A stretch of DNA of 64,000 nt from Octopus sinensis (taxonomy: Eukaryota), in contig NC_043000.1 in the NCBI RefSeq assembly GCF_006345805.1, positions 12,276,001-12,340,000 of the forward strand. The letters run 5' to 3'. The position numbers and the translations under genes are program-made. Under the pieces are notes generated by a model, which had not been told where the DNA came from, searched no databases, and saw only the letters and a list, made by a program, of their open reading frames with translations. Shown piece after piece: positions 16,311 through 63,819 of this stretch (position 1 is its first letter; the number at the start of each line of letters is the position of its first letter).

Positions 16311-16311
16311 C

Positions 16312-16549: not shown

Positions 16550-16591
<42 letters not shown>

Positions 16592-18630: not shown

Positions 18631-18892
18631 TATGTATGTGTATATATATGTGTGTGTGTGTGTATTTGTGTGTGTGTATATGTATGTTACATTTGTATAT
18701 ATGTATGTATATATATATGTGTGTGTGTGTATGTATATATTTGTGTATATGTATGTTATATTTGTATATATGTATGTGTATATGTGTGTGTGTATATGTA
18801 CATCTATGTATATACACATCTATATATGTGTATACATATCTGTGTATATGTATGTATGTTGATATACTTTATTTAAAAGCAGCCAAAATTTA

Positions 18893-24566: not shown

Positions 24567-25977
24567 AGTTATATCTTATCCTTTTTCCTCCTTTCACTTT
24601 GAATGGATATAGCTTATAAAAAAAACTTGTAGCTGCAAATTATAGGAGTTGTGAGTGAATCCCAATGAATTATTAAATAATGAAGCCTGTTGGTTTGGTT
24701 TTCATCTCAGGCTACTGATGTGGTCCTAGTTTTACTGCAAGACTCTCTCTCTTATATATAACACCATGGGGGTATTCTAGTAACAATTGGTGGGTTGTCA
24801 AAAGGCAGTAAACTGGCAGAATCATTAGCATGCTGAACAAAATGTTTAGCAGCATTACATGTGACCCTATGTTCTGAGGTCTACTTTGCCTTTCATCTTT
24901 TCGGTTTACTAGCCCATCTCTTAAAATTTCAGGCTTTGTGATTGTAGAAAGAATTGTTGGGCTGTCAACCTTGTACCTTTATGTAAATGAATTGTATCTT
25001 CCACTACTTTTGAGGGATGGTGAGATGAGGGCTTGATGAATTGTTAGATAAGAAAGAACTAGTCATTTTGATTCTTAATCCAAGCTGCCAAAAATAGCCC
25101 AAATTAGTCTTATTTCACAAAAAGGTATAGGCAGATACAAGCCCTTACATATTCACAACTCCCACTATTGGTATTCTAATGCTTAGCCTTTATACTTATA
25201 TATGTATTTGGATGATTTGTATGATGACCACACTGCTGGAGTTGGTCAGTTATGGAATTGGAAATTGGATCATTCAGTTGCGAATACTTATGAGAATATA
25301 AACCTGCAAATGTCCACATCCTGACTGAAATGAAAAGATTATGTAGAGATTCAAATGAGATTTTTGTTCAAACTATTGAAATGATAGAGTATCAGATTAA
25401 CAATGTTTAGTTTTGTCTTATTTTATGTTCAAATTCTTTTGGAGGTTACTTTATATGTCATTATACTTCTACTGGATTCTATCTATGAAATAATACAAGA
25501 GTTGGTTCCTTTTGTTGTACAGCTCTCTATGTATATGTTAGAAATCATTATTTGCTTGCTAGCTTACATAATGTTTTTCATGCATCAAATGCAGGAAAAT
25601 GGTCGAGTTCACGTGGAAATTGTTTTGTTTGTCATGGTACACTGACACAGGCCATATATTATCTTTTCCAGATGCACAGCCTTTTAATATCAAAGCTATT
25701 TATTACCTTATGTTCTCCTTTAACAGTTTTTGTGTAAAATACTCTGTTTTTTTTCCTCTCCAAATTTGTATTCTTGATTTTACTAGCCATTCTAAGGTAA
25801 GAGATTTTAGTACAAATGTAGCGGTGTTTTCATAAGATATTAAGAGGGCTATCATTGCAAAACTGTTTGGAAAAAAATGATTATTTAAATGTATTGTAAT
25901 GTAAATGTAATTAAAGTCATTAGTGGGAAGTTTTTGTAGAAATAAAATGTAAATCTTGGAATTCACAATAAGGTAAA

Positions 25978-26052
25978 TGCTATGATGGTTTTATTTTTCG
26001 TCTCTGAATGTACCATTTACTTTGGTACTTGTTGATAATGAATGTCTGAGCA
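25978..26052 (+). ncRNA. SNORD56: Box C/D snoRNA, U56-like copy 1 (subfamily B)
   Basis: Box C ATGATGG 25982, guide ttatttttcgtc, D' CTGA 26004, internal stem gtacca/tggtac, C' ttgataa, box D CTGA 26046; external stem ttcacaataag/cttattgtgaa. Confidence 0.85.
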
Positions 26053-26469
26053 ATACTTATTGTGAAACATAAGGTACAACTGTGTGGTTAAGAAACTTGC
26101 TTTGCAATCATGCGGTTTCAGCTTTGATATCACTGCAAGGCACCTTGGGTGTCTTCTAAAACCCTGGGCTGTCTAATACCATGTGAGAGTATTTGGCAGA
26201 TCAAAGCTTGCAGGAAGCCTGTCATACATGTGTATATGTATGTTACATTCCACAGTTTGTTGTCGCTTGATATTTTTTACTGGCATTATGACAGGTCACT
26301 CTGTACTTTTAAAGACCTATGGAATAAATAAATTAGTATTTCAGTGTATTTCAATGTTTGAACTAAAAATTTAATAAAACATTTTTCCATCATAAATCTA
26401 AAGATGATTACAGAATAAGTGCAAATATTCATAGACCAGATAGTTCTTGCTTCAGTCTGTTTGACTAAT

Positions 26470-38079: not shown

Positions 38080-38169
38080 AATTCCCATTCTCAGAAACCT
38101 CAGAAGATTCTGGTCATGAACCCTTAGCAGTGCCACCACTAACTACTGCTGCAGCAGCAGCAGGACCAT
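38080..38169 (+). CDS. MTA1: MTA-family gene: 90-nt phase 1-1 exon in the BAH insertion (probable cassette)
   Basis: Long pyrimidine tract + CAG acceptor, GTAAGC donor, open frame FPFSETSEDSGHEPLAVPPLTTAAAAAGP, in phase with the next exon; no sequence homology recognised. Confidence 0.7.
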
Positions 38170-40825
38170 GTAAGCTTTACATTGAAACTTCTAAACATGA
38201 GGCAGTTGGCAGTATTTATGGACATATTTCAATGCTTTTTAGTCTTGGCCATTGCAAATTGTTTTTGGGACTAGTTAATTTTTTCCAGATTTTAGATTTC
38301 TATTTTGATCTCTTGATGAATTGTATTTTTCCATTTACGCTTCAATGAATTGGTCTGCAGACTTGTTTCATTCCACTCACAGATTGTCATTTCTTTGTGC
38401 AGTCCCAAGTCATTTAATATTGCTCTTAATCACCTAATTATATAATTAATCAATACCTCACCTATCAGTATTACATATCCATATTCGTGTGTAAGCCACA
38501 ATTATCTTACATGTCTACATATTACATATCCTATGAAGCACTCCTTTTTGTTTTTTTTTAAGATCATGTATTTCATCAGATGAAAAAACAAAAAAAAAAT
38601 ACAGTGATTGATTTTTACCAGTTTGATTTGAGATAGTTTGTTTCACAATTTGTTTCATATTAGATTTCATGCTATTTTAGTTTATGCTGTGGTAGCCTAT
38701 TTTTAATTTCAACCCTAACTTTTTTTTTTTTTTGTAGTATAAATTTTGTATTTGGTTCTGCTAGGAATTGGAAGTGTTTGCTTCCCTATATAACTCTTTA
38801 CATGGTTAATGAATTATTTTCTGTTTTCCATATAGGGTAGTTTGAAAATAAATTTAGTATTTACCTCTTGGAAAGACTAGCTACAATGAGGTGATCAATA
38901 AACCCAGTGTTTTGTTTCAAATGAATACTTACATAATGTCTTGGATATATTTACATGTATACTATGTTTTAAATTGATCTATGATCATCACTGTCTTCCT
39001 TTCCTGGATATACACTCAGTTTGTCACTTAGAGCTATGTATGTATGTAAGAATAAAACACCTGCTGATGAGAAATTAAATTGATCAAAACATAGTAAAAA
39101 TGTAAATATTAAGAAAAGAAAAGATTCTATCCCTGAAGATGAAGTCTAGTAATGTGAAAAACAATTGTATTAGCAATGACTTAGAGATTTAGTCTTCAAT
39201 TCAATTTGTCAGATTAGATGACTTAACATTTTGTCACCTTTATCTTTTAATTGCAAGTTTTAATTTATTTCAAGTATATTGTAAATAAAGAAAACAGATC
39301 AGCTATGGAAATTATATTTCCAGCAATAACTTTGGGTAATAACACTCTTTTGTTTAGAAAATTTTCAGATTTAGACATAGGTAGAAAATAGCCCCAAAAC
39401 TTTAAATTAATTTAAAATGCAAAATAGAATCATCCCCACCCTTGCAACTGGAGCATTAATATTAGGAAAAAGTGTCATCTTGAACAGTAAGGAGATACTT
39501 GTGCCAAAGAGTTTACTCATTTTATTGTGCCTCAAAACTGATCATAAATTGATTGATTGTAGTTTTATGATTATATTGTAATGTTTTAAGATATCAACTA
39601 TATTATGAAATAATGTCTGAACAAAAATATGCAAATGCTCATAAAGGAATTCACAGATACCTCAGTAAATATAAACCTTCAAAGGCTCAAATGTCTTAAT
39701 TTTTATTATAGTATCTTTAGTACAGAATACAGTCAAGTGCTAACCACCAGATTTACTCCTATTACCATTTTCTTAATCTTTTATTGATAATGACCATCTG
39801 TTTGGATTATATTGGAGGGGCATTTATATAACGTATCTTTAATCATTACATAATAGATATTCAGTGGAAGAAGTCATATAAAGTTTCTATATAAAATGAC
39901 TGGCTGAGTCACTCATCCTGTTCTGTTTATATCTAATTTGGTTTTGTTATTGTCTCCTTTAAATACTTGAATCCTAGTTGATTGGACTAAACAAATATTT
40001 TATACTCTGATTTAGTATTTTCTCCTTGATAACTCACACCCCACTTAAACTGCCAATGGGTAGTGTTGTAACAAGAGCATTGTAAAATTGATGTTTTATG
40101 TTCTGCTCATTTTTTATTATGGTTGTAGCTTGAGACAGACTCAGCCATGAAGAAAAAAAGCCAACAGTACTTCACTAATATTTTTTTTTTTGTTCATCCA
40201 TTCCAGATTTGCTAATTCAAAATAGGATATCATAATTGAATATCACAAAATTTAAACTTCGCAATAAATATTGGTTCAATTAATATTTGAGCTAATCAAT
40301 ATTCATTAGGATTGTCCTCAATTGTAACTGACTATCTATATCATCAAAATTGTCCTTTATGTTTGTACTTATGTGCTAAAAATATGCACTAAAGATATTG
40401 TCAATAACAATTCTGGATGAATCTGGTCAGTAATAGTTAATCTATTGTTCATTACAATAAATTACCCATAAAATTAGGTTTTATAAACTGTAAAACGATG
40501 TAATTAGAGCTAAGTGGTTGGCTTTGTTATTCCTTCATAGTCAATAAAATAAGTGTAGAAACTGAAAGGTAAACTACATGTGGTGTGTTTGATTTTCAGG
40601 GCATCACTAGATTTATCACTGGATGTTCAACAACATTTGTTGAACAATTGTATTGCCTTTATGTTCATGTTAATTTATTCTACATCTATTTGTATTAAAT
40701 TGCTTCCCCACTTTTGCTGGTATGATTTCAAGTTTTCATGGTAATTACTGAAAATATCTATCTAGAGTTGATGTTTTTATGTATTATCTCAGACTAATCT
40801 GAGTGTTTAATTTTGTATATTGCAG

Positions 40826-41016
40826 TTCCTTCTCTGGAAGAAGATTCCGAAGAGATCAATGATGACATCACAGAGAAACAACGCCATCAATTGAAGCACA
40901 GAGAACTCTTCTTGTCAAGACAAGTCGAGACTTTACCAGCAACACATATTCGAGGAAAATGTGTTGTCACACTTTTAAATGAAACAGAATCATTATTATC
41001 ATATTTGAACAAAGAG
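40826..41016 (+). CDS. MTA1: MTA1/2/3-like exon (BAH domain C-terminal half)
   Basis: [47 protein letters not shown]; TGCAG acceptor, GTATGT donor; 191 nt, phase 1-0. Confidence 0.97.
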
Positions 41017-44000
41017 GTATGTTCCTTTCTTCTAAACAAAAATTCTACAGTCCTTGTAGGGAGACATTACATCTACAATGTTTGAGTGAACTTTGTCCTA
41101 CCATCTCTTTTTCTCTCACCATTTTCCTTTTTGCTCACTGGAGTGGCCATGCATCTCCTCTACAGGAATATGGTTATTGGAATTTTAGACAAAATGAAGA
41201 CTTAATGAATATTAAGCAAATTTGGTTTGGTTAGAATTGATACAAATAAATGTAGTTTAGTTATCTAAAAAAAAGTTAGTACTTTGGTATGGCTCGAAAT
41301 TCTAACTCCATGTCGGTGGTGTTTATGCTCCTGGTCAGCTCTGATTGTGCAGGTCTATAAACATTAGTTCTAGACAACTATGTTTTTTTTTTTTTTTTTC
41401 TTAGCATATCTCCTTTTCTTGATACAGTTGGGTGTAATTTAAGGGTGCCTTTGCTACTATTCCTAACAGATTGAGAGATTATATGTTGACACTGTGTTCT
41501 TTAATTTTAAGTTAGCCCTGATTAACATAGGTTTCTCTTTGGCTCAGTTGGTTCAACTCCTCATTCTTTTATGGTCCCATCCATTGCATAGTTTTAGGAA
41601 TGTTTGGAGATATCCTCCCCAAAATAGTGGTTCCAGCAATTTTGTCCATAACAAACATTTTATGTTTTTATAGACTTGTTGTCACCTGTGACACAAATCT
41701 GTACGGACATAGAATGGTTGTTTAGGGCTGCTACAAATGTAAGCTTTAACAGAATTGATTTTATCAATTTTTGATGGTCCTTGTAGTTTCATCAATAGAT
41801 ATTACCTTGTGTAGTTGCTTCTAAATCACTTCTGAAATTTCATACACATAAGCAAACTTGATGTCTTTAATAATATGACAAAATAAAATGGAGTCTATTC
41901 TCAACACTATATAATAATGTGGTATTAATTCAGTCTTTCAGCTGAGTATTAGGATAAATTTGCATTTACAAAATATCTTTAATTTTTTTTTTCAAAACTA
42001 AGAATATTGTACAAGTAATTTGTGTACTTATCTACATTCAGTGTTTTGTGTTTGCTTTATTTATTGTCCCTACACTAAATGACCAATGATAGTTAAATTA
42101 GAAATATCTAAAACATGTTATGGGTAAACACTTCCTAGTTTTATCAGTTACTGTATAATTGCAGCAATAAACACAGTTAAATGCAGGTTAAGAAGCTATG
42201 AAAATAATTTTGCTTGTTTAATATAGTTGGAAATTATAGCAAAAATGTCATGCAAGCCAAAAATTGTGAAATAAGAAAACAAGCAGTATAAAATATAAGC
42301 TCATAAGTAATAAGGAATCAAAATCTTAATTGTTAAATAAATCTAAAGGTTTTCTTCCTGTAAATATTCTGAAAATTTGTCCTGATGTGTGGCTGAAAAC
42401 TGTACATAGTACAGTTGTTGTTATGGTTGTTCTTATTTGGACAACAAGCTGGCAGAATTGTTAGCATACTGGACAAAATGCTTAGTTGGTTTCTGAGTTC
42501 ATATTCCACCAAGGTCAACTTTGCATTTCATGCTTTCAGAATTGATAAAATAAGTACTAGTCAAGCATTGGGGTGGAGCTAATTAAGTACCCTGTTCTCC
42601 CAAAATTTCAAGCCTTGTATTTATAGTACAAAGGGTTATTATTGTTGTTGACTATTAACTCTAAGAGATGAAAAATATTTTAATATTTGTGTCTATTTTT
42701 GAATTAATTTGATTCCCAATTCTCATGTGTCTTATTCCTGAATATGTACTTAACACCAGTCTGGTTTCAAACTAACCTTTATATATACACACACACATGT
42801 GCATGTGCCAAGAGTAATACTTTCATCAATTTAGCTTTTCAGTAGGCTCTGTATGTACATATGACATCTTCGGCATTTGCATGCAGAAGATATTGTAAAG
42901 GAGAAGCTAGCCTCTGGATAGGATATTAAGTCAGGGAGTGGCTGAATATATATGGTGTGAAAAAGGAAATTATATTTCATTTGAGAATGAAAACTTAATA
43001 ATTGATAGAGAAATACGGTGGAAACTTTAAAAAGAATCCAGAAAATCAAAGCAGCACTAGATAAAGAGCTTATTGAAAGCCCATTCAGTAAGGCTAGCAT
43101 GGATAACAAATATCTCACAGATTTCTGTCTCTGACGTGATTGGAGAAACTAGTTGTGGATTGGGTATTAACTCCAGGAGCTGTCTGTGGTGATTACATAT
43201 GGAAACATTAAAAGCATTGTTTTCTGAATTGGTTTCAGAAAATAGGGACTTTTACATGACATTTTGAAACTTCAAAATAATTTTATTTTAAAAGCTTTAG
43301 CTTTCTTTTTTTCTTTTTTTACTTATAAAAAAAAGCTGAAAATTTATTATTTTAGATTTGTAAGGAAGGAATAAAGTTAGACTGGAGAGATTCTTATGTT
43401 GCTTGTAAGGTCATAATATGGGGCATGTAGACAAAGATAGGGGGTGGGTTCATAGTGCATACATATGTAAGATATCATTCATTAATGCTTGAGACTATCC
43501 AAGTTTGCCTGCCATTTTCATAACATGAATTAGGTATTGTCAGAATTTTATTTTCTCTAAATATTTGTTCGTTAGTTCTATTAAATTGTATCTTTTTAAA
43601 AACTTACATGAAGTTATATAAACTTCAGATTTAGTAATAACAACCCTGAATTGGAATGATTTTTGTTAGCAGCAAATAATAAAAATGCATCAAATGTAAT
43701 GCATATGCATTTTATGTCGTTTCAACCCTTTGTGTATAAACATGATTTCTAGTGAGTGAATTGTGTGAAAACTTTGATTATATTTCTCTTTCATAACTTT
43801 TAGAAGACCTCACACCCATTTCCTCCTCATCATGTCTCAAAATTCATTGGCTGTTTCTTTTATTTCAACTCAAGTGTTCCATATAATGACCTGAGACTAA
43901 TCACTATGCAAAATGCAAACAAAGGAAAAAGGACAAACTAGATGAAATTAGCTCATTTTGCCATCCATATAATGAGTGAAGCTACATTATAATGTTGACT

Positions 44001-44535
44001 GATAACTCATTTTATATGGTGATATTTAAACAAAAAACTTTAGATTTCAAAGTTCACTTGAAATTAGTTTTGTAACAAAAATGCTCCCGTAAATTTAGAC
44101 TCTTAAGTTGCTTAAAATATCACTTTAATATAATAAATATAGCATAAGAAATAGTTTTATATAACCAGTTTAAATTTATGATTATTTCAAAAAGTAATTG
44201 AAACATTTTAATATAGTGACAAAATAGTTAATAACTTAATAAAAAAAATTGTTCATTGTATCATCTTCTCGCTTCACACTGATTTTCTTTCAATGATTTA
44301 TGATAATCTCAAATTAGGAAACCTATAATTCACATATTGATCTGAATTTGAAGAATATTCAGTCTTGAAAAAGGGAAGAAAAATAGTTTGCAACAAAAAA
44401 GAAAGATTAAACCTGATCTCATCATTAGTTTATCTTTTTTCTATATTAATTAATCTTTTGCATATCTTTTCAAATTGAAATATTGGAATAGTAAGACAAA
44501 AATCTGTCTTAAAATTGAAAAAAAAAAAAGGTAAA

Positions 44536-44606
44536 TGCTATGATGGTGTATTTTTCGTCATCAGCTAATGTACTTTTGTACTTGTTGATAATTGCATACC
44601 TGAGCA
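44536..44606 (+). ncRNA. SNORD56: Box C/D snoRNA, U56-like copy 2 (subfamily A)
   Basis: C ATGATGG, guide tatttttcgtca, D' CAGC, C' ttgataa, D CTGA; external stem aaggtaaatgct/agcattttacctt. Confidence 0.88.
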
Positions 44607-46263
44607 TTTTACCTTCCTTATTTCTTTGAAAAGTTTTTCTGTTAATGAAAAGTACTCCATAAATAATATTATTGACTTGAACATTACAATATATTAGATC
44701 TATTATAACCTAGTGAAAACAATTTTTTTTTTTCTTACTTGCTGCATATTATCTTCAAAATTTTTTTAATTAGCAAAGGAGTATAAACAAATAGATAACT
44801 ATGTTCAGTATTTGCAAAGAAATGTTCTAAGACTGAATAATAAACACATATATGTTAGGTGCTCAGAAGTAAATGTGTAACTTAATGCTTTCATTAACCA
44901 ACCTACTCATGATCACCCTTTTTCATATTTTTTTAATTTTTACCTGTATATATTAAAATCGAAATATTGTAACAAGCACAACTATGTCGTGGACATAACA
45001 GTTGTGTTTTAATTTCCTTTAGAAAAAGTGAGGAATTGAATCCTTAATTAACTAATAATAAAGGACCAATTTTTCAGTAAACCAGGATGTTCCTCAGTAC
45101 CTGCCTGTTTCCATTTTTTGTTAAAAGCCATTTAGTTTATGAAGAAACATTTTTATTTCTAATACTTCTTCCTCTTTTCCTCAAATTTATCTAAATGTCA
45201 GGATCATTGTTTTGAACTAATTAGAAAATCACCTCATTTGGTCAGTTTTGTAGAGTTCATGTGCACAACAACTTTAAAATTAGTGATTGGTTTCATTGTA
45301 GCTGGAAAAGTTGAGTTACATTAGAGAATGCAAGGATACGCACTAGTGTGTCTGGAAGAGATAATACAGCTTCTGGGGGTCTTGTAATGCAAATGATCTA
45401 GCCATCTATAAAGTTCCTGGAAACTATCCACCCAACAAGTTGCATAATGAATATATGGGTATGAGAGCCAAATCAACTTTATTCTTACTGGGAAAAGAAA
45501 CAAGCTGTTGGTTGTAAATACCATTTGACATTCTTTGAAAGAGAAGGTGACCAATAAGTTGTGGTTGAAATCAGAGAAGAATTGGAAATAACAGATTAGC
45601 TTCTTTAAAGTATACTTTCCCAATGGCACAAGCTAATGTTTATTTTTTAGGGATGAAGCCTATGACATACATGATTGATAGCTAGCAGCTATCTACTTGT
45701 TAGAGCAGAGGAGGAAAAACAGTATCTATGGCTTTTTTGCAGGGGCTTGAGAGAAGTCAGATTTTAATATCATCAGAATGGAGATCTGGTTCAAATAACT
45801 ATTTGCACCAGATTAGTGTCTGTCATAGAGGTACCCAAAGGCCAAGTGTTGATTTTAAACTGACCAACACAAGAACTGATTTAGTCCATTGTCTGATCTT
45901 TACTACAGTTTCTGTCGATTCAATTTTACTCTGGAGACTATGGTAGAAGTTAGTTGTCCAGAGTGTCGGAGTGTTGTCTTTGTTAAACAAGAAGTCAGGA
46001 CTAATTAGTAGGTAGAGCAAATAGATGTATTTTATGATCTGTACTTTGAAAAGCAGCATATGTTTTGGAATATGGTGTGTTATATTAAGATATCATTGAG
46101 GTGGCTTATGCCTGAAATGACATTGTCATTTTTTAAAAATTCATATTTCCATGTTGTTATGGAAGTTTATGGTGACTATTTATTAAAGGAGCCGTTAAAT
46201 GAATACTTGTACATCATGAGTGATATCAGTTAAAATACCAATGAATTCTTTCCATTTGGTAAA

Positions 46264-46345
46264 TGCCGTGATGTTGTATTATTTTTCGTCATCAGCACTT
46301 AGACCATTTAGTTTTGGTATCTGTTGACAATTTAAAATCTGAGCA
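46264..46345 (+). ncRNA. SNORD56: Box C/D snoRNA, U56-like copy 3 (subfamily A)
   Basis: C GTGATGT, guide ttatttttcgtca, D' CAGC, C' ttgacaa, D CTGA; terminal stem ggtaaatgc/gcattttacc. Confidence 0.85.
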
Positions 46346-47271
46346 TTTTACCTGTTTTAATCCCCTTAAGTTTGAATTTTTTTTCCAGTCCTATCTTAAA
46401 CTAAGCCTGTAGGTATTTCATTTCCACACACTTGTACCATCACACTATACTATGTATCACCCTAGTTTACAATCAGTATGCTCTGGGATTCCTACCTCTT
46501 CAGCATAGCTAGTCATTGCTAGGTTTACTTTGGGGCCTCTCAATTCTAAGTTTTGCTTCCAAGCTTGAAATTTTTTCTCTAAATCTTTGATTCAACTATG
46601 AAAACCAAGCCATTGACATACAGAAGTTCCTGTGAACAACCATTTAGTTTTCAGATTACTTTGTAAAACGTTATGCCTATATACTCACATTGCTTTGAAT
46701 TAATCGTGCATTATTTCATAGCTTCCAGATTTTGATGAGGTGATTATTCTTAGAATGACATTGCAGGATAGACGTTAAAGGCCAGTTCTAGCTAGTTTGA
46801 ACATAAACTGGGTAGAATATTTTGACTGGTTCTGGCTAATTTAAATGCTAAAGAGTTAAATTATTCTTATGGCCTGAATGACTGTAATATAAAGAGGACT
46901 ATGAACCAATCCCTATTGTACTCCACCCTGCCTATTATATTCCTTGCTGAACTCATTAACTCACCTAACTGACAATATTGCATACATGTTTTGTATAAGC
47001 CATTCATCTATTCCTTGTTTTCTAAATGACTGCTAGACTGCATACTGGGAGATTTTGTTAATGACTTTCTAAGTTTAGAAAGACTAGGAAGAGGGCATTG
47101 GTGATACCTTCTGGTATAAATCTGTCATATTTTTTAATATCTGTTGATTGCAACAATGTTTATAGAAGATATTTTATGCTTATGTACTTCTTACTGATGT
47201 AACAAAATTTAGTAAAGTTTGTTTATAAAACCAAAGTTCTTTCACTGAGATGAATTATTTTCTCTTTTCAG

Positions 47272-47389
47272 GATACATTTTTTTATTCATTAGTATATGA
47301 TCCACAACAGAAAACATTGTTGGCAGACAAAGGTGAAATTCGAGTTGGTTCAAAATATCAAGCAGAAATTACTCCTTTACTTAAAGAAG
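47272..47389 (+). CDS. MTA1: MTA-like exon (BAH end / ELM2 start)
   Basis: [39 protein letters not shown](G); AG/GT; 118 nt, phase 0-1. Confidence 0.97.
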
Positions 47390-48315
47390 GTAATATTTTG
47401 TTTAGTGTTGGCATTACTACACTTGCTGTTTCTTGTATATGTCTTAACTTCTTCCATTATTGATAATTATATGCATGTTCTTCAGAGAAACAACTTAGAA
47501 TTAAATATAGAGACAGTTTGTTTCACTAATGATTGGGAAGAAGTTGAGGCAAGATGTTGGTCAGAACTCTATGAATATGTTATTCTAGTTTAGAAATTTA
47601 TGTATACAGTTACAGTGTCATTATGAAGTTGTTAGATGGTGTGCAAAGAAAGATATTCAATACAAAAACTTGTAATATACATCCCAATATCCATTTGGTA
47701 GTCATAGTAATCAGGAGTGATATAGAAACTGTAGTAAGTGGTGAGATTAAAAATATATGGATATCAAGTGTTCTGTCTAAATACCTGGACATTGCACACA
47801 CATATATTACCTGGGCATTGCTTTGTACCCATGTTAGTTTACTTACAATACCATTCTGTATCTACTGACCCAGTTTCCATTTTCTGTTTCCTGTGACTTA
47901 TTATTACAGCTTTCATAAATATTTTCATCAAATAGTTAGTCAGGTCATCTTAAACTAAGCCTGTAGGTATTTCATTTCCACACACTCGTACCATACACGG
48001 AACAGTACATAGATGTAATACCTAAGAAGAATTAACTACCTGTATGTTTCTATTAATTATAAAAATTAGGGTTTGGAAGGAAAGATTCTTTTAAACTTGA
48101 ATTTGATCTCTCCAATTTTCTAGAATCTAGACTACCATGATTTGAACTAATTTCTTGATTTTTATCTGCTAATGAAATATCAATTTGGGTGGACCAGAAA
48201 TAGCTGAAGATAAAGAGTTTATGGTGACTATTTATTAAAGGAGCCGTTAAATGAATACTTGTACATCATGAGTGATATCAGTTAAAATACCAGTGAATTC
48301 TTTCCATTTGGTAAA

Positions 48316-48394
48316 TGCCGTGATGTATTATTTTTCGTCATCAGCACTTAGACCATTTAGTTTTGGTATCTGTTGACAATTTAAAATCTGAGCA
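48316..48394 (+). ncRNA. SNORD56: Box C/D snoRNA, U56-like copy 4 (subfamily A)
   Basis: As copy 3 with a 3-nt deletion after box C. Confidence 0.85.
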
Positions 48395-48842
48395 TTTTAC
48401 CTATTTTGATCCCCTTTGAATTTTTTTCCCAGTCCTATTTGTTGGGTCTGTCCTAGTGTATTTAAATAATTGGTCAGTTAATAATATTTATTACATACTT
48501 TCATTTTTCAGCTAGCCTCTTTCTCTTATGATAAATATGTAATTAGTTAATGTAGTTTCTCTTTCTCTATTAGTTTTGTTCATATAGTTTTCATTGACAT
48601 TCAGAGACAAAATTATATTGTGTTTGTCAGGAGTGTGCTGTAAAGATTAATGTCGGTATGTAATATGAGAATTGCACACAGGTACTTACAAGAAAAATGG
48701 TAGTTGGTGATGATATGGGAAATGAGAATAATTTTAGCATAAGACGAAGGTGTCTGGTGTCATATTTTAGAGATTGTTTGTAGCAAATATTTGAAGTAAA
48801 ATTAACTTTTTTTTTCTTTTTTTTTTTTTTTTGTGTTTATAG

Positions 48843-48951
48843 GTGAAAAAGATGGAAGAAGCTTGGATGAACTTGAGCAGTTAATTTGGCTGCCTGGCCC
48901 TGATAACACCTTAACACCAAAAGAAATTGATCAGTTTTTGATATTAGCCAG
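48843..48951 (+). CDS. MTA1: MTA-like exon (ELM2)
   Basis: GEKDGRSLDELEQLIWLPGPDNTLTPKEIDQFLILAR; poly-T tract + TAG, GTTGGT donor; 109 nt, phase 1-2. Confidence 0.95.
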
Positions 48952-49548
48952 GTTGGTTTACAGAAATTTTGTTTATAATGAACTATTCTAAATTGTCCAA
49001 AGTGTTCTTGGTCTTTTCAGCCAGCCAAAAATGTTACTGTGTTCTAGGAAAAAAATTTTTTTCTTCACATTTCACATTTTATAGAAGATGAATTCAATCT
49101 GTTGAAATTTATTTTAAAAAAAAGTTTTATTCTCTTTCCACTTGTTTGTTATGAAAACACCAGGCCAGAGTTTTCTTGTATTTAAATCAAAATACTGAAT
49201 GAGACAGTGATATGATGTGGTTTCACTTGGTACACTGTCAGAAATTGCAACAATGTGAATTCCTTTTCCTCAAGGTTTCTTAGTTATTTTTTCCTTGTGT
49301 ATTTTTTATTTTTATAACACCCCCCCCCCTGACCCCAAAACTTAAAAAAAAATTATGCTAGTTTCAGATTTAGTAATAGTAATTCTGATTTTGAATGTTT
49401 TTATGGTTTTTTTCTTCTTTCTTTTGAATGTAACAACTAACAGAAATGCTATAAGCACTAATATGGAGTGGACTTTGAACTAGATGTTTCAATTTCTAAA
49501 TTGAAAAGCAATCTATAGTTTAAAAGTGAATTCTTTCCATTTGGTAAT

Positions 49549-49630
49549 TGCCATGATGTTGTATTATTTTTCGTCATCAGCACTTATGCCATTTAGTTTT
49601 GGTATCTGTTGACAATTTAAAATCTGAGCA
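49549..49630 (+). ncRNA. SNORD56: Box C/D snoRNA, U56-like copy 5 (subfamily A)
   Basis: C ATGATGT, same guide, D' CAGC, internal stem atgcca/tggtat, D CTGA. Confidence 0.87.
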
Positions 49631-50890
49631 TTTTACCTATTTTGATCCCCTTTGAATTTTTTTCCCAGTCCTATTTGTTGGGTCTGTCTTAGTGTATTTA
49701 AATAATTGGTCAGTTAATTAATATTTATTACATACTTAGACTAACACAGCAGCTTTTAACATGGCATGTTGGTTTGATATATATCAGATATCTAATGGAA
49801 TTTAGGTTTTTGATGTTTGAAAGTCTTTTTGTTGTCAAAGTGGGTTTTTTCTTCTGAAATATATGAATATATTTTAGTTTAATACTTCCAGACTAAACAT
49901 ACCTGTGGTTAACTCTTATCTAGAAGACGTGTGATGAAATTACTTTCTTTTATTTAGGCATAATGTATCCATGAATACATTATCCAATGTGTCCTTTTTT
50001 ATAAGACATTGAGGGGTTGCATGTGGAAGATGTGGCTACTAATTTGTAGATGGTCAATGACTACATAATAATACTTTCATTAGCTTGTCAGGCTATTTAT
50101 TATGTGATCTATGAGATGTTTTCACTTGATAACCTTGCTATTGCCTATTTTCGTTATTAAAGTTTTGAGTTGATAGCATGAATAACATAAAGCACAAAAA
50201 TAATTTTGAGTTTCAAATTACTTACTTCAATGGTTGAGACATTTAATACAATAGCTTCATCCACTTGACCCATAACCTAACTTTAGACAAGGACATTATA
50301 TATTCAGTTTGAACTGTTGCAGGTTAGGGATTGAGAAACAAGCAATGAATTGTTTGAAGATTTTTTTTGTCCTTCTTAACAAGTGTCTTCTATAGCCTCA
50401 GACTAACCAAGGCTTTGTCTGTGAAATTTAGTAAAGAGAACCTGTGTAGAAATTCAGCATATATGTTTGTTGTTTATGGCCTAAACAAAGTGCTTTGACA
50501 AATGGAGATTGATAAAATAACTACCAGAAGTACTGGGAACAATATGACTGATTAAACCTGAACATAACTGGGTAAAGTTAGAATAACAACAGAAATGATT
50601 TAGATCAATATAGTCGTTGTAGATTATTGGAGAGTAATGTGTGTTTATTGAGCATTCTATATTACAGAATGTGTATATGTATGATGGGTGGTTGTAAAGT
50701 CGTTTTCTCGTGTGTGAAAATAGTGATGTAGATACATATATAAATAATATACAGATTAAAAAGAAAAATACACAGAGCAGACATTGAATATTGGCTCCAC
50801 CTAGTGTTGATGAATCCACTCCTAGTTTATTATGATTTAGACAAGAATTTTTTTCACTTTGGTTCACAATATAAAACTCTTGTTTACCAG

Positions 50891-50990
50891 GTCTGTTGGT
50901 ACATTTGCTCGAGCTTTGGATTGTACCAGTACTGTGAGGCAGCCAAGTCTTCATATGAGTGCAGCAGCAGCTTCAAGAGATGTCACATTG
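50891..50990 (+). CDS. MTA1: MTA-like exon (ELM2)
   Basis: [33 protein letters not shown]; CAG/GTAAGT; 100 nt, phase 2-0. Confidence 0.98.
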
Positions 50991-51859
50991 GTAAGTACTG
51001 CATTACTCTTTCATCCTTACTCCAGTCGTATGTCCAATCAACAGTCATCATTATTATCATTTTAACAGCCATTTTCCCAAGCATGTATGGGTTAGGTGGA
51101 AGTTGTTGAAGCTGAATTTCTATGGCCAGATACCCTACCTGTTGCCAACTATCAAAGGTTTCCAAGTGAGGCAATATTTCTCCATAGACAGACATGTTTC
51201 CTTCCACAAAAGATTGGAAACAGACACTGCCTGTATGATGATATATTCTTTTACAACTATCATGTAATATCACAAGGAGAGGCTGATACACATGCACACA
51301 CATACACACATGAACTTTTAGTTTCTGTCTGTAGAAATGAACTTCTGTTAGTTGTGCACACTGAGGCAAAAATGTTTTGTTGTCTTTCCAGATGCACAGC
51401 TTCTTAATATCACAACTATTACCTTGTGTCTATTTTCCATCAAAGGATTTTGAGTAAAATACTTCAAGTGCATATTTCATTTCCAAATTTGTATTGATTT
51501 TGTTAAACATCAGAAGGTTAACTATCAGAACCTCTTGAATAAAACAAATGTCAAGGTACCGTCATAAATTTTATGGGGATTGTTATGTGAGGATATCTCC
51601 TGTAAAATATTAAATGTACTTACAAAATATTCTGAAAGATGATCAGAATTTAAATGTGTGTTACTGTAATGTAAATGTAATAAATCACATAATCCATATG
51701 TTTTACTTTAAAAAAAAAAATCATACCTGGGAATTAAAATATTTAAATATTACTTTTAAATAATTAAAGGACTTTTTTATGAAATAATAAGATGTGAAAC
51801 CTATAGATACTAAAGAAAGTGTGTAATCATTCTGGCCAAGTGTAGTACTTGCTTCAATT

Positions 51860-52810
51860 TGCTTGACTAAAGTTTTGTTTGTTTCTAATGGTTTGGTTGG
51901 AAAGAGCAGTTTATGCCCATGGCATTTGTAAACCTTTCAAGACTGGTGAGATAGATGTAGTTTTCTTGAATTAGAGCTTTTAGGAAATTCTAGAGGGAGA
52001 AAGGACTGGGGAAAGTGGTCAACGTGTGGTTTTGATGGAAAGGCAGAAAAACTATCAGTGACAAGAGGGAGAGATGAGTGAGTTTGGAGGGTGTGGATGG
52101 GGGTTCCTCAAGCCCAGCTGAAGAGCATTTGTAATAGTAAAGGTAGAGTGAGATTACAGCTCATTCAAACCTGAGATTGGAATGTTGACAATCAATTGCT
52201 TGTCAATCAGTTTAGTTACTTTTTGATCAGGTTTGAATGTCTGAGTAGAAGCAGTGTTATCCAAGATGTGTGAACTATAATCCACTGTATAGGGTTATTA
52301 GTAATACAAAGGCCAGTCTTTGTAGTGTCAAGGACATGATATTATCAATAATGGTGAGGTTGAGCATCTGTTGTGACTTTGCGGGGTTTGTTTATATTTT
52401 GGGATGAAGTGTGATATTGTTTTCTTTGTGTGTAATTATTGTTCATTAAGTTGGTGAAGGAGACAATGTAAATTTGGTGTGAAGTGTGTATGTAGTTTGG
52501 TGTCATTTGTATTTTTTAAAGATGTGAGGGATCCAGATGTGCACAAATGCTCCAGTTGTTGTCACAGAAGTACACATTTGTATAATCCGTCCTTGTCTGT
52601 TAAGGGTACCACATAAATTTATCTGTATGCAGTCAAAACTTACATTGCTTTTACAGTAGTATCTTTAAAAGTGTAGTATTTGAAGCATCATTTAGTTATT
52701 ACAGAGTTAACAGGAAAAAACAGAAGTAAAACAAGAAAATATTGTAATTAGTTGTTCTTGCATAGCTTTCAAACAGATTTTATTTTTGAAGTTATATTTG
52801 ATTACAAATT
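51860..52810 (-). mobile_element. Second copy of the unclassified degraded repeat
   Basis: Colinear with 26470-27430. Confidence 0.55.
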
Positions 52811-52956
52811 GTACAATTAATCACCCTGCTTGAATCTCTAGATTATTTTATATATATATGTTTTAGTGGAAGGTTTAAACATTGATCATACTGTCTTTAG
52901 ACTGAAGTTATTTTTGTTGGTGCTAAGTGGTGCTAAATCTTTCACAATAAGGTAAC

Positions 52957-53031
52957 TGCTATGATGGTTTTATTTTTCGTCTCCGAATGTACCATTATCT
53001 TTGGTACCTGTTGATAAAAAATGTCTGAGCA
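52957..53031 (+). ncRNA. SNORD56: Box C/D snoRNA, U56-like copy 6 (subfamily B)
   Basis: C ATGATGG, guide ttatttttcgtc, D' CCGA, stem gtacca/tggtac, D CTGA; external stem ttcacaataa/ttattgtgaa. Confidence 0.83.
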
Positions 53032-56000
53032 TTTTATTGTGAATTTGCAAACATAAGAATGGTTAAGTTACATAGTTTTAGGTTCAATATCGCTGCACGA
53101 TACTTTAGGTTGGTGAATGCCATATGAAGGAATTCAGGTGATAGGAGCTGTGTATGCTCAAGTTTCACACATATGACTATTTTAGTAAAGTGGTGCTAAT
53201 GTTTGTCATGACTATCCACCCTGTGCTTTCATAAACTTGTGTAATAAAGAAATCCCTTAGTTGAAAAACAGGAAGAATTGGCTTGAGGAAGAGCATCTGG
53301 ATGGAAAATCCTGCTTCAACTAACCCTCTGTACAGACCTAGCATAGAAGAACAGATAATGAATAAAAACACACACACATACACACTATTCAAATTATCAG
53401 TAATTCTCTCTCAGCATTTCAGACCCCAGGGTGTGCATAACATCATATGACCAATCTGGCAGTTGATTTATGTATAATTTAAATTTTCACTTAAAAACAT
53501 TAAACAAATTCTGTTCAAAACTAGAGCAAGGGAGACAACCTAAGTTATATGTACAGTGAAAATTGCAGAGTATTAAACAAAAATTTGTAGGATATATTCA
53601 TAGAATATTTTGTAGCTGAACATATTACCATTTTACCCATTCAGCCAATTGTATGATGATATTAACATGGCACCAGGCATATCTTTATTTGAAGCAACCA
53701 TAACTAAACATTGGGTATTATGCTGTACTCCATTATTTACTACAGTATTTTTTGAAGTGGTCAGAAAACCCAATACAAGATGTGTTCATTTAATGTCCAC
53801 CTTTCCATGCTTACAAAGGTCAGACAAAATTCATTGAGACAAGTTTCTTGTGTTTTTTTTTATAACTGGATGCCCTTCCTACTACCAATCTTTTAAATAA
53901 TGCTGTGTTTCCCTTAATGTTTTGAACACAAAACAGAACAGCAGCTAAACATGATTTCTTGGAAGACTACAAACTAGTGATACTATTTATTTGTATGACA
54001 GCAGCAGTCATTTACAACTAGTGCTTGATCTCAAGGCAATAAATGAACACAGGCATATCCCACTCATGTACAAATATACACACGATGGGTTTTCAATTTC
54101 CATTTACCAAAACCAATTACTAGTTATTGGCCAGTAGAAGACCCTTGTCCAAGGCATTGCACAAATTGAACCTAAAGCCATGTGGGTGAGGAAGCAAACA
54201 TCTTAACTGCAAAACACTCTCTCCTTATGTATATATATATATTTAATGGTTTCTGTACACAGAGTTAAATGTATGCCTACTGGTGAATTTGGAGCTCCTT
54301 GTTATCATCTAGTCTACTTAACATACAGTTGTCATAAACAGTTAAATTTAGTCAACCATAACATAAATTTCTGCATTCTATCATGCATTTAAAATCCAAA
54401 TATATATATTTTAACAACCCGAACCACAATCTAATTATCGTTCAGCTGTTACACTGAAGGACAGTCTGCAAAATCAGTATGATATATACTGTTGCAATAG
54501 ATATATTCATTGCTTATAGTTAATTATAAGGACTAACATGCATGTTTAATCTTTACTTAGTTTAAGGTTCAAATTCCATGCAAAGTTAGCAAAACTATAA
54601 GTAAAAATTTCGAGAGCATTTCATAACAAAGATATTTCATATTTAAAAATTTAGGATACTGTGGCATGTGAGAGTACACTAAAATTTTATTGAAACAATA
54701 AAAGTGGAAGGGAGACAACCTTAATTCTATTGTAAAGTGATAAAAACGCCTTGTAATACATAAATTTATTATAGCTATGAAAAAACTTTTCTAGTGGAAC
54801 TTGATAATTTTCGAGAACAGCATTCTATTCTTCAAACAATTACATCCAGATATTAATGCTTCCTTAAACAAGTCTATATATGAAGAGCTTATTTTCAAAA
54901 CCAGATATATACATCAGAATAACTTTTGAGTAATTGAGGAAACGACTTGAATATATCTGATATTGATTGGAAGACTAAGATTTGTCTACTGTTTATATGG
55001 TATCTATCCCAGTTTGACCAAAAAATTTTCACATGCATTTTCACATGCATGAAGCCAGCTTGCAGATTGTGTTTTAATGGTTATCATGAAATTGACCAAA
55101 CATGCACTTATACTGATTTTGAAAGTAAGTTCCTCATATAATGAACCGTCTTCAAACTGAATTAATAGCTGGGAATTTAGTAGTGTTTTTGTTGATTATC
55201 TGAGTTTATTGGTGATAGGAGTTAATGTTATATACATATAAGAAATGCATAAGCTGTATGCTAAACTAAATAAACAGTGACAAAATTTCAGAGAACACAC
55301 AGGCATAAGACCAGTTCTTGGACAGACTCAGGGCAGATTTTGGAGGTAGAGGGAAATAACTGAAAAGGTTGCAAACAACGACAAAAGAACTGTGACTAAC
55401 AAACAACTAATTGATTGCTTAACCAGTGCAATTAAACAAATGATCAATTAGTTAGTTGGTTTGACATTTAACCAATTGACTAATAAAGAAGTAATCCTGA
55501 ACTAATGTGTGTGTGTTATTAGCATAATGACCCTCCCGAGACACAAAATTTGTTTCAACACACAAATTCACACCAAGAATTTTACAAACCAAATGCAAAA
55601 ATGAAATAAAAATGCTTTATAAAATTATTGAGCATGTTGTCTAAAAGTTAAAAAGCTAAAATAGATTTCATGAGATGAGCTCAATTTGATGGAGATGGTA
55701 GTAGAGGTGATGGTTGTTATTTACTAAGTTAGTTGAGCTATAATACTCCACTGTTCTTTACTTCTCACATGTGAGGTGACTGAGGAAGGACTGGAATTGA
55801 AATAACAGCAGGTGAATCATGAGTACCATTAACAGGTGTGGTGAATTTCTGATAGATGAATTGTCTTGAATGAATTAGGTTTCAGTTGTTTACCATACTG
55901 TGTTGCTTCTAAATAGTGTATTCATTCAAGATCCTAAAATATTGAGAACATTATTAAAAATCAGTTTCTGTCAATATACAATGTTAGATGCCCCTCCTAT

Positions 56001-56209
56001 TGACAACCCTCACCTTTTTCCAAGCTAGGTACAATTTCACTTTGGGAGAAAGGAAACTAGTAGCCTTTTTTGATGATGATGGTAGAGGTGGTACCTATGC
56101 ACCATCATTTCGTGATGTCGAGACAGTGGTATGCATACTTGCCCCCCCCCCCTAAATATATATAAATATATATATACACATATATATTGGCACTTGTGTA
56201 CCGGTAATA

Positions 56210-56485
56210 CATGAAAAACAACATTTGAGCGTGGGTGTTACCAGTGCCGCTGGACTGGCTCCTGTGCAGGTGACATGTAAAAATACCATTTCATCATGGC
56301 CGTTGCCAGTATAGCCTGACTGACTCTTGTGCCAGTGGCACGTAAAAGCACCCACTACACTCTCGGAGTGGTTGGCATTAGGAAGGGCATCCAGTTAGAG
56401 ACTCTGCCAGATCAGATTGGAGCCTAGTGCAGCCATCTGGCTCACCAGTCCCCAGTCAAACCGTCCAACCCATGCCAGCATGGAA
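56210..56485 (+). mobile_element. RTE-tail SINE
   Basis: ggcacgtaaaagcacccactacactctcggagtgg...ccgtccaacccatgccagcatggaa. Confidence 0.75.
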
Positions 56486-59041: not shown

Positions 59042-59116
59042 TGCTATGATGGTTTTATTTTTCGTCTCTGAATGTACCATTTACTTTGGTACTTGTTGAT
59101 AAAAAATGTCTGAACA
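59042..59116 (+). ncRNA. SNORD56: Box C/D snoRNA, U56-like copy 7 (subfamily B)
   Basis: C ATGATGG, guide, D' CTGA, stem gtacca/tggtac, D CTGA; terminal stem has one mismatch. Confidence 0.8.
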
Positions 59117-59339
59117 TTTTATTGTGAATTTGCAAACATAAAAATGATTAAGTTACATTTTATTGTGAATTTCCAAGGATTATCTTAGCTGTGCAGTTAA
59201 GAAGTTCGCTTTGCAATTATGCAGTTTTAGCATTGTTTCCACTGCTACTCTTGACATAGATGTCTTCTCTAGCCCCAGTTTGACCAATGCTATGTGAGTG
59301 AATTTGGCAGACAAACTGTTGTTTGTCCCTTCTTGTTTG

Positions 59340-63300: not shown

Positions 63301-63630
63301 TAATAAAGAATTTATTTGATGGTTTGTAAGATGCACCTCCTTTTCTTTTTTTTTAACCATCAAAAATATAATCTTGGGTCTTATATGTAAAGTTGAGCTT
63401 CTCATAAGCTAATTTTGTCCCAGGTGTCCAACATACACTGCTGAAATTAGGATGCATCTGATATGCTGTGCAACTTTTATGCTATCAAATATGGTATATT
63501 GCTGGTATTTCTATTCATTCATAACTGAGCTGTTTACACGTAGTTGGTTTAGCAATTAGTTTCATGTATAAAATATGCGAAGTTTTAACATTGTTGCTTC
63601 TCTCTAAAATTTTATGTTATCTTTTTTCAG

Positions 63631-63819
63631 TTTCATGCCATGGATACTTTACATAGAAGTGGCTATGACATAGCTAAAGCTGTTACGAGTTTGGTACCAC
63701 AAGGTGGTCCTGTACTGTGTCGGGATGAAATGGAAGAATGGTCTGCATCTGAAGCTAATCTATTTGAAGAAGCACTAGATAAATATGGCAAAGACTTCAA
63801 TGATATAAGGCAAGATTTT
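63631..63819 (+). CDS. MTA1: MTA-like exon (ELM2 end / SANT); gene continues beyond the window
   Basis: [63 protein letters not shown]; TTTTTTCAG/GTAAGT; 189 nt, phase 0-0. Confidence 0.98.

What the first reader, a model, noticed from the sequence alone, without database searches (positions are those of the whole stretch)
25989..26007. Subfamily B has a 1-nt guide-to-D' register shift predicting a new 18S methylation site
Seen: subfamily A reads tttttc-g-t-c-a-t-CAGC (g fifth from D'); subfamily B (25978, 52957, 59042) reads ttttt-c-g-t-c-t-CTGA/CCGA, having lost one base and gained a near-canonical D' box, so c is fifth. The shift is kept in all three B copies despite other divergence. Established: the rRNA base paired to the fifth nucleotide upstream of D/D' is methylated. 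Inference: A targets the C517 equivalent and B the adjacent G518 equivalent (human numbering), i.e. neofunctionalisation by duplication that would give tandem 2'-O-methyls in this 18S helix.
Basis: partly seen in the sequence, partly recalled or inferred. Interest (0 to 1): 0.8.

Follow-up and report, generated by a model that had tools for sequence, protein, structure and literature searches.

The report
Octopus snoRNA paralogs shifted by one base
Introns of the octopus MTA3 gene carry two conserved versions of one rRNA-methylation guide RNA that differ by one base in the spacing that picks the target, so they should methylate two neighbouring bases of 18S rRNA; the second of those sites is already known in fruit flies.

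Summary
The window is Octopus sinensis, identical to GCA_006345805.1. It holds seven sense-strand, intronic copies of one SNORD56-like box C/D snoRNA inside the MTA3 gene. Four are A copies (…UUUUUCGUC-AU-CAGC) and three are B copies (…UUUUUCGUC-U-CUGA; B2 has CCGA). Under the fifth-nucleotide rule, A points to the human-C517 equivalent and B to the neighbouring G518 equivalent.

- Both registers are also present in O. vulgaris, O. bimaculoides and Argonauta hians.
- B forms one clade that is older than the Octopus/Argonauta split.
- Individual B copies decay (O. bimaculoides B1 is dead; O. vulgaris B2 has lost its D box), but each gap-free or well-covered genome keeps at least one intact B.
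- B paralogs are 92–96% identical, while the SINE they share immediately downstream is only 56–72% identical.

So B is a maintained gene, not a relic.

One correction: the G site is not new to biology. Drosophila 18S-Gm475 is the same position and lacks the C methylation. Human and Arabidopsis methylate the C only. What may be new is both registers coexisting as conserved paralogs, which predicts tandem Cm-Gm in octopod 18S. Expression and methylation could not be tested here. It is a new variant of a known kind, of moderate interest.

The parts
25978..26053 (+). B1 snoRNA in MTA3 intron 2, the best-preserved B copy. C box 25982-25988 (AUGAUGG); guide 25991-26002 (UUAUUUUUCGUC); spacer U 26003; D' 26004-26007 (CUGA); internal hairpin 26010-26015/26023-26028; C' 26033-26038 (UGAUAA); D 26046-26049 (CUGA); terminal stem UGC/GCA.
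   Evidence: (93.3 bits). The fold with flanks has z = -3.9.
25962..26066 (+). External stem flanking B1: 25962-25972 (TTCACAATAAG) pairs with 26056-26066 (CTTATTGTGAA). Such stems are typical of intronic snoRNAs processed far from the 3' splice site.
   Evidence: Equivalent stems flank the other copies (GGUAAAUGC…GCAUUUUACC in A copies).
52957..53032 (+). B2 snoRNA in MTA3 intron 7. D' 52983-52986 is CCGA; D 53025-53028 is CUGA.
   Evidence: The O. bimaculoides orthologue has D' CUGA. The O. vulgaris orthologue has D box CAGA and a guide U>C change.
59042..59117 (+). B3 snoRNA in MTA3 intron 7. D' 59068-59071 is CUGA; D 59110-59113. The terminal stem is weakened (ACA in place of GCA).
   Evidence: The O. 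bimaculoides orthologue keeps GCA.
44536..44607 (+). A1 snoRNA in MTA3 intron 4. Guide 44549-44559; spacer AU; D' 44562-44565 (CAGC).
46264..46346 (+). A2 snoRNA in MTA3 intron 4. D' 46293-46296 (CAGC).
48316..48395 (+). A3 snoRNA in MTA3 intron 5. D' 48342-48345 (CAGC).
49549..49631 (+). A4 snoRNA in MTA3 intron 6. D' 49578-49581 (CAGC).
38085..63819 (+). Host gene MTA3 (BAH-ELM2-SANT protein), exons 3-8: about 38085-38168, 40826-41016, 47272-47389, 48843-48951, 50891-50990 and 63631-63819. Intron 2 runs off the 5' end of the window.
   Evidence: The encoded peptide is 100% identical to Octopus MTA3. The window is identical to O. sinensis CM016862.1 over 37,082 bp.
26090..26210 (+). SINE immediately downstream of B1. 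All three B copies share it at the homologous position, so it serves as a neutral yardstick for paralog divergence.

Best explanation
**What it is.** These are intron-encoded box C/D snoRNAs, divergent homologues or functional equivalents of vertebrate SNORD56/U56. They are hosted in sense orientation in introns 2, 4, 5, 6 and 7 of the Octopus sinensis MTA3 gene.

**How it should work.**
1. After splicing, each unit is trimmed to the core held by the C/D kink-turn and the terminal and external stems.
2. The core assembles with Snu13, Nop58, Nop56 and fibrillarin.
3. The only conserved antisense element, UUAUUUUUCGUC upstream of D', pairs with 18S 5'-GACGAAAAAUAA-3'.
4. Fibrillarin methylates the rRNA nucleotide opposite the fifth snoRNA nucleotide upstream of D'.

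**The two registers.**
- In A copies two nucleotides (AU) separate GUC from D' (CAGC; CAGA or CAGU in Argonauta). The fifth nucleotide is then G and the target is the C517 equivalent, as for human SNORD56.
- In B copies one nucleotide (U) separates GUC from a canonical CUGA. The fifth nucleotide is then C and the target is the adjacent G518 equivalent, the position methylated in Drosophila as Gm475.
- Octopods keep both registers as separate, long-lived paralog lineages. Their 18S is therefore predicted to carry adjacent Cm and Gm.

**Shown:** sequences, boxes, register, intronic sense position, conservation and phylogeny.

**Inferred:** expression, snoRNP assembly, methylation at either site, and the Octopus 18S sequence at the target.
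For: - **Seven complete units.** Each has a C box, D', C', D and stems. There are 8 TTTTTCGTC hits against 0.12 expected.
- **Register arithmetic and duplexes.** A forms 13-14 bp including a terminal G·U wobble. B forms 12 bp, with the target well inside the duplex.
- **Link to SNORD56.** The Rfam SNORD56 consensus shares AUGAUGG, UUUUU..UCA, a 2-nt spacer plus CAGC, and UGUUGAU with A copies. Human Cm517 is the SNORD56 site (PMC4288182, PMC11550049).
- **Constraint on B.** B paralogs are 92-96% identical across the snoRNA. The SINE shared immediately downstream is 56-72% identical, and the upstream flank does not align.
- **Both registers in other species.** O. vulgaris, O. bimaculoides and Argonauta hians have both. 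Argonauta B copies sit in intron 2, like O. sinensis B1.
- **Single old origin.** B is one clade (90/93 support) with Argonauta B sister to Octopus B. The internal hairpin shows a compensatory change: GUACCA/UGGUAC in Octopus, AUACCA/UGGUAU in Argonauta.
- **Birth and death with retention.** O. bimaculoides B1 is dead but its B2 and B3 are intact. O. sinensis B1 is intact while its B2 and B3 are slightly degraded.
- **Mechanism from experiment.** Moving the D' C by one nucleotide moves methylation by one. Adjacent Nm are tolerated in yeast (PMC5389607).
- **The G is methylatable in vivo.** Drosophila 18S-Gm475, guided by snoRNA:CD68, is fibrillarin-dependent and confirmed by nanopore (PMC11014333).
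Against: - There are no expression, snoRNP or methylation data for any cephalopod. A literature search found none.
- The Octopus 18S target sequence was assumed, not retrieved.
- Several introns hold two copies, and the copies lie 0.4-1.3 kb or more from the next exon. That placement is not the classical optimum for processing.
- Some B copies carry damaging changes: CCGA in B2, a weak terminal stem in B3, and a CAGA D box in O. vulgaris B2.
- Orthologue comparison between O. sinensis and O. bimaculoides has no power. Introns are about 93% identical and the snoRNAs 93-96%.
- Gene conversion between B copies occurs (the B3 flank) and inflates paralog identity.
- A and B bind the same rRNA stretch, so they compete. 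Either site could be substoichiometric.
Confidence: 0.6

Rival explanations
1. A and B both direct methylation of the same nucleotide, so the family is simply redundant. This would follow if the internal C'/D' module tolerates a one-nucleotide difference in spacing, or if the effective D' of one form sits one position off.
For: - D' boxes are often degenerate, and A's CAGC lacks the A of the sheared G·A pair.
- Some yeast C'/D' motifs adopt two alternative registers (PMC5389607).
- Copy number turns over freely, as expected for a dosage family.
Against: - B's D' is a canonical CUGA preceded by U, not by C. The known five-nucleotide D' exception therefore does not apply (PMC5389607).
- In Argonauta, A's D' is CAGA at the same register, which supports the box assignment.
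- Human SNORD56 with the A spacing gives Cm517. Drosophila methylates the G only (PMC11550049, PMC11014333). Each single register therefore maps to one nucleotide in vivo.
- Two discrete spacings have stayed fixed in 13 A and 9 B copies, with no intermediates.
Confidence: 0.12
2. B copies are weakly expressed or inactive relics. Their similarity is kept by gene conversion and hitch-hiking in a duplicating intron cluster, and only the C517 equivalent is methylated.
For: - O. bimaculoides B1 has lost its C box, D' and D box.
- O. vulgaris B2 has D box CAGA and a guide change.
- O. sinensis B2 has CCGA, and B3 has a weakened terminal stem.
- B3's flank carries a B2-like conversion tract.
- B2 and B3 share one 12.6-kb intron.
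Against: - Intact B copies, with unchanged guide, spacer and CUGA, survive in Argonauta. The flanks there no longer align with Octopus at all.
- B is one old clade.
- Every species with sequence available keeps at least one fully intact B.
- Across the seven intact Octopus copies, variation falls in spacers, the hairpin loop and the 3' pseudo-guide. The exceptions are B2's D' (CCGA) and O. vulgaris B2's D-box and guide changes. The two Argonauta copies add changes at the guide's 5' end and within C', with the UGA core unchanged.
- Long external stems are maintained with different sequences in different copies.
Confidence: 0.12
3. Only the B register is effective in octopods, giving Gm as in Drosophila. 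A copies, with their degenerate D', contribute little. Octopus 18S would then carry Gm but not Cm at this spot.
For: - B has the canonical C'/D' pair (UGAUAA/CUGA). A has CAGC with UGACAA.
- Drosophila, another protostome, has Gm475 and no Cm474 (PMC11014333).
Against: - The same degenerate CAGC and spacing appear in the Rfam SNORD56 consensus, and human SNORD56 is assigned to Cm517 (PMC4288182).
- A copies are at least as well conserved as B. Guide, spacer and CAG are invariant in 13 copies from four species.
- A forms the longer duplex.
Confidence: 0.1

Closest known systems
Vertebrate SNORD56 (U56), guide for human 18S-Cm517 (Rfam RF00275)
   Same: It shares the C box AUGAUGG, the antisense element against GACGAAAAAUA, a 2-nt spacer plus degenerate D' CAGC (A copies), the C' UGUUGAU and the D-box layout. 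The predicted target of A copies is the same (PMC4288182).
   Different: - It scores only 14 bits against a gathering score of 36.
- The host gene is MTA3, not NOP56.
- There are many copies per gene.
- B copies have a 1-nt spacer and a canonical CUGA.
Drosophila snoRNA:CD68, guide for 18S-Gm475
   Same: Gm475 is the position equivalent to human G518. An offset of 43 is fixed by Cm419/462, Am425/468, Am441/484 and Am469/512. This is the nucleotide B copies are predicted to methylate (PMC11014333, PMC11550049).
   Different: Drosophila has only the G site and no Cm474.
Yeast U18, U24 and snR13 (two adjacent Nm from one guide)
   Same: The outcome is the same: two neighbouring 2'-O-methyls in one target region, set by the position of D' relative to the guide (PMC5389607).
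   Different: In yeast one snoRNA folds its C'/D' motif in two alternative ways. In octopus two paralogs each carry one fixed register.
Arabidopsis SnoR7 (18S-Cm473) and Dictyostelium DdR8
   Same: - Arabidopsis C473 equals human C517 (offset 44; PMC8053127), the A-type site.
- The DdR8 consensus ends …AUUUAUUGUC-U-CUGA, the same GUC-U-CUGA register as B. The Drosophila paper labels Gm475 as shared with D. discoideum.
   Different: DdR8 uses its terminal D box, not D'. The Rfam match is only 10 bits (E = 3.4), so this is a lead, not a homology claim.

Membership tests
Box C/D 2'-O-methylation guide snoRNA | C box (RUGAUGA) near the 5' end and D box (CUGA) near the 3' end | tested here: met
   The C box is AUGAUGG or GUGAUGU. 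The D box is CUGA in all seven window copies.
Box C/D 2'-O-methylation guide snoRNA | Terminal stem that brings C and D together | tested here: met
   UGC/GCA plus 6-11 bp external stems. The folds of B1 and B2 with flanks have z = -3.9 and -3.8. B3's innermost pair is lost.
Box C/D 2'-O-methylation guide snoRNA | Internal D' and C' boxes | tested here: met
   D' is CUGA or CCGA in B and CAGC in A. C' is UGAUAA or UGACAA. A hairpin lies between them, with one compensatory change in Argonauta.
Box C/D 2'-O-methylation guide snoRNA | An antisense element of at least 10 nt, ending 1-2 nt upstream of D/D', complementary to rRNA | tested here: inconclusive
   A 12-14 bp duplex forms with the conserved metazoan 18S motif GUGACGAAAAAUAA. 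The Octopus 18S sequence itself could not be fetched.
Box C/D 2'-O-methylation guide snoRNA | A stable RNA bound by fibrillarin, Nop56, Nop58 and Snu13, with the target nucleotide methylated | not testable with these tools
   No RNA-seq or modification data are accessible. No cephalopod Nm map was found.
SNORD56 (Rfam RF00275) | Score at or above the Rfam gathering threshold | tested here: not met
   There is no hit at gathering. B1 scores 14.0 bits against 36.
SNORD56 (Rfam RF00275) | D' guide that selects 18S C517 | tested here: met
   Met for the A copies by the fifth-nucleotide count. Not met for B copies, which select G518.
SNORD56 (Rfam RF00275) | Location in an intron of NOP56 (from my own knowledge of the vertebrate gene) | tested here: not met
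   The host is MTA3. The MTA genes of Patella and Saccostrea have no copy.

The most novel reading that the evidence does not exclude
Octopod 18S rRNA carries adjacent Cm and Gm, at the human C517 and G518 equivalents. Two separately conserved paralog lineages of one snoRNA install them, and the lineages differ only in a one-nucleotide guide-to-D' spacing. This would be a living intermediate of the site sliding that separates the human/plant C site from the fly G site. The two forms would have been kept since before Octopus and Argonauta diverged because each methyl group is individually useful.
Probability: 0.5. Interest if true: 0.5.

Novelty: new variant of a known kind. Interest (0 to 1): 0.4.

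Why it matters
If confirmed, this would be a clean natural example of how rRNA methylation sites move during evolution. A one-base indel next to D' in a duplicated guide retargets fibrillarin to the neighbouring nucleotide, and both versions can then be kept. It would link the human/Arabidopsis C site and the Drosophila G site as two registers of one guide family. It also gives a precise, inexpensive prediction for the first cephalopod rRNA modification map. It does not reveal a new mechanism or a new class of RNA.

Tried and rejected
- **Rfam at gathering thresholds:** no hit in the window. Only sub-threshold C/D matches appeared, the best being SNORD16 at 19-23 bits, whose guide differs.
- **Metagenome scan** for TGATG…TTATTTTTCGTC: 120 loci, almost all chance matches in prokaryotic contigs. 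The covariance model found no homologue among the 20 that best fit a C/D layout. L111 (CGUCAC|CUGA, a C517 register) may be a eukaryotic U56 but was not pursued.
- **Generic C/D scan of the window:** no other convincing snoRNA family.
- **O. vulgaris orthologue of B1:** cannot be judged. Collinearity ends at an assembly gap, L121:27010-27109.
- **Sepia pharaonis MTA locus:** the gene range is just over 100 kb, so no DNA was returned. A second protein search found no other cephalopods. The age of B beyond octopods is therefore unknown.
- **O. sinensis versus O. bimaculoides orthologue divergence as a selection test:** no power, because introns are about 93% identical.
- **Origin in MTA outside cephalopods:** Patella and Saccostrea MTA genes have no copy.
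- **Considered and rejected:**
  - The shift is an alignment artefact. An ungapped reading needs six substitutions against one indel plus two.
  - B copies travel as part of the SINE. Other SINE copies in the window lack the snoRNA.

Full report
**1. What is in the sequence**

Positions 25989-26007 read UUUUAUUUUUCGUCU followed by CUGA. The 9-mer TTTTTCGTC occurs eight times on the + strand against 0.12 expected by chance. Seven of these hits lie in complete box C/D units; the eighth, at 10921, is chance.

A covariance model built from the family finds exactly these seven copies in the window, at 79-93 bits. Each unit has the following parts:
- a C box, AUGAUGG or GUGAUGU
- an antisense element, UUAUUUUUCGUC
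- an internal D' box
- a short hairpin
- a C' box, UGAUAA or UGACAA
- a non-conserved 3' spacer
- a D box, CUGA
- a UGC/GCA terminal stem, extended by 6-11 bp of flanking complementarity

The four A copies (44536, 46264, 48316, 49549) read CGUC-AU-CAGC. The three B copies (25978, 52957, 59042) read CGUC-U-CUGA, with CCGA in B2. One deletion plus two substitutions relates the two forms.

**2. Where it is**

The window is Octopus sinensis. It is identical over 37,082 bp to GCA_006345805.1 CM016862.1.

+ strand exons at about 38.1, 40.8, 47.3, 48.8, 50.9 and 63.6 kb encode the BAH-ELM2-SANT part of MTA3. The peptide is 100% identical to Octopus MTA3 proteins.

All seven snoRNAs are intronic and in sense orientation:

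| Copy | MTA3 intron |
|---|---|
| B1 | 2 |
| A1, A2 | 4 |
| A3 | 5 |
| A4 | 6 |
| B2, B3 | 7 |

They lie far from the downstream exons, which fits the long external stems. No other C/D family was found in the window, and Rfam gives no hit at gathering thresholds.

**3. Relationship to known snoRNAs**

The Rfam SNORD56 model aligns weakly, at 14 bits against a threshold of 36. Its consensus (…AAuGAuggCAAUAuUUUUcaUCA-A-CAGCAG…GUGUUGAuAC…GUCUGAg) shares several features with A copies:
- the unusual C box
- the guide
- a two-nucleotide spacer followed by CAGC
- the C' box

Human 18S-Cm517 is the SNORD56 site, and no Gm518 is listed for human (PMC4288182, PMC11550049). A copies are therefore the octopus counterpart of U56. 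They do not pass the Rfam membership test, and they sit in a different host gene. Patella and Saccostrea MTA genes have no such snoRNA.

**4. The register**

I paired the guides with the conserved metazoan 18S motif GUGACGAAAAAUAA. That motif is from my own knowledge; the Octopus 18S could not be fetched.

- A copies form 13-14 bp reaching the D' box. Their fifth nucleotide upstream of D' is the G opposite C517.
- B copies form 12 bp. Their fifth nucleotide is the C opposite G518.

Argonauta supports the D' assignment in A, because there the same position reads CAGA or CAGU.

That the ruler follows D' is experimental knowledge. In a yeast artificial-snoRNA system, moving the 5' C of D' by one nucleotide moves the methylated nucleotide by one, and adjacent 2'-O-methyls are tolerated (PMC5389607). 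The nucleotide before B's CUGA is U, not C, so the known five-nucleotide D' exception does not apply.

**5. Is B a living gene?**

*Within O. sinensis.* The three B copies are 92-96% identical over the 76-nt unit. A SINE that all three share at the homologous position immediately downstream is only 56-72% identical, and the upstream flanks do not align.

*Across species.* I fetched the MTA3 loci of O. vulgaris (L121), O. bimaculoides (L122) and Argonauta hians (L124).
- All carry both registers. There are 13 A-type copies with CGUC-AU-CAG(C/A/U) and 9 intact B-type copies with CGUC-U-C(U/C)GA, with no intermediates.
- Argonauta's two B copies lie in intron 2, like O. sinensis B1. Its A copies lie in introns 4 and 6.
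- In an ML tree B is a single clade (90/93 support), with Argonauta B sister to Octopus B. The shift therefore arose once, before these lineages split.
- The hairpin shows a compensatory G-C to A-U change between the genera.

*Turnover.*
- O. bimaculoides B1 has lost its C box, D' and D box.
- O. vulgaris B2 has a CAGA D box and a guide change.
- Argonauta has one A-type pseudogene.
- O. sinensis B3 carries a B2-like conversion tract.

Each species with sequence available still keeps at least one intact B. This is birth-and-death evolution under selection at the family level.

*Limits.* O. vulgaris B1 cannot be judged because of an assembly gap. Orthologue comparison between O. sinensis and O. 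bimaculoides has no power, because introns are about 93% identical.

**6. Is the G site new?**

No. The Drosophila RiboMeth-seq and nanopore map lists 18S-Gm475, guided by snoRNA:CD68, and no Cm474 (PMC11014333). Four shared sites fix the offset to human numbering at 43: Cm419/462, Am425/468, Am441/484 and Am469/512. Gm475 is therefore the G518 equivalent.

| Organism | C517 equivalent | G518 equivalent | Source |
|---|---|---|---|
| Human | Cm517 | none listed | PMC11550049 |
| Arabidopsis | Cm473 (offset 44) | none listed | PMC8053127 |
| Drosophila | none listed | Gm475 | PMC11014333 |
| Octopods (predicted) | A copies | B copies | |

The Drosophila authors mark Gm475 as shared only with Dictyostelium. 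The Rfam DdR8 consensus ends …AUUUAUUGUC-U-CUGA, the same register as B. That match is weak and is only a lead.

The two registers are thus both old in eukaryotes, each known singly. The possible novelty here is that both coexist as conserved paralogs. Which one is ancestral in cephalopods is not settled.
- The SNORD56 similarity favours A.
- The high similarity of A and B outside the spacer shows that one derived from the other within the cephalopod lineage, or that conversion has homogenised them.

**7. Verdict**

- **Observation:** confirmed.
- **Interpretation:** partly supported. The mechanism and the conservation argument hold and are strengthened. The 'new site' claim is overstated, and nothing about expression or methylation could be tested.
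- **Confidence:** I put about 0.6 on the full model, with both sites methylated by A and B respectively.
- **Main rivals:** redundancy (same target), B as weak relics, and B-only activity.
- **Novelty and interest:** a new variant of a known kind, of moderate interest, with a sharp and inexpensive experimental test.

Noticed in passing
window 1-17000: This part of MTA3 intron 2 is almost entirely TA/CA-rich microsatellite arrays and LINE reverse-transcriptase fragments (ORFs 4803-5492 +, 12245-13942 -, 17175-18154 +). There is an assembly gap at 1049-1148.
   Followed up: no
window 18447-18640, 21010-21404, 26090-26210, 56270-56486, 59865-60087: Multiple copies of an octopus SINE are present. 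One copy lies directly 3' of each B snoRNA at the homologous position, so it predates the B duplications within Octopus.
   Followed up: partly
window 59117-59200: B3's 3' flank carries a B2-like tract (…ttttattgtgaatttgcaaacataaaaatgattaagttaca) followed by its own older flank (ttttattgtgaatttccaagg…). The older flank is the only one present in O. bimaculoides. This is evidence of conversion or partial duplication between B copies.
   Followed up: partly
window 46348-46390, 48397-48435, 49632-49670: A2-A4 share a polypyrimidine tract plus CAG about 37 nt downstream of the snoRNA. It looks like a 3' splice site. It could be an unannotated mini-exon or simply part of the recent 200-nt duplication unit.
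   Followed up: no
L121:15833-15908 and L122:15436-15511 (MTA3 intron 2, upstream of the window): An eighth family member ('A0') is identical in O. vulgaris and O. bimaculoides. It has the A register (CGUC-AU-CAGU) but a shorter guide (AUAUUUCGUC; about 9 bp including the terminal G·U wobble).
   Followed up: partly
L122:34387-34463; L121:50940-51015; L124:39796-39868: Decaying copies occur in other species. O. bimaculoides B1 has lost its C box, D' and D box. O. vulgaris B2 has D box CAGA. One Argonauta A-type copy has a broken guide.
   Followed up: yes
L125:~14840-14915 (Patella vulgata MTA intron): An unrelated box C/D candidate with a 6-bp terminal stem lies here. MTA introns may therefore host other snoRNAs in gastropods.
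   Followed up: no
L121:27010-27109: The O. vulgaris assembly has a 100-N gap exactly where collinearity with the window ends (window 29842). The roughly 17 kb that holds B1 in O. sinensis therefore cannot be compared.
   Followed up: yes
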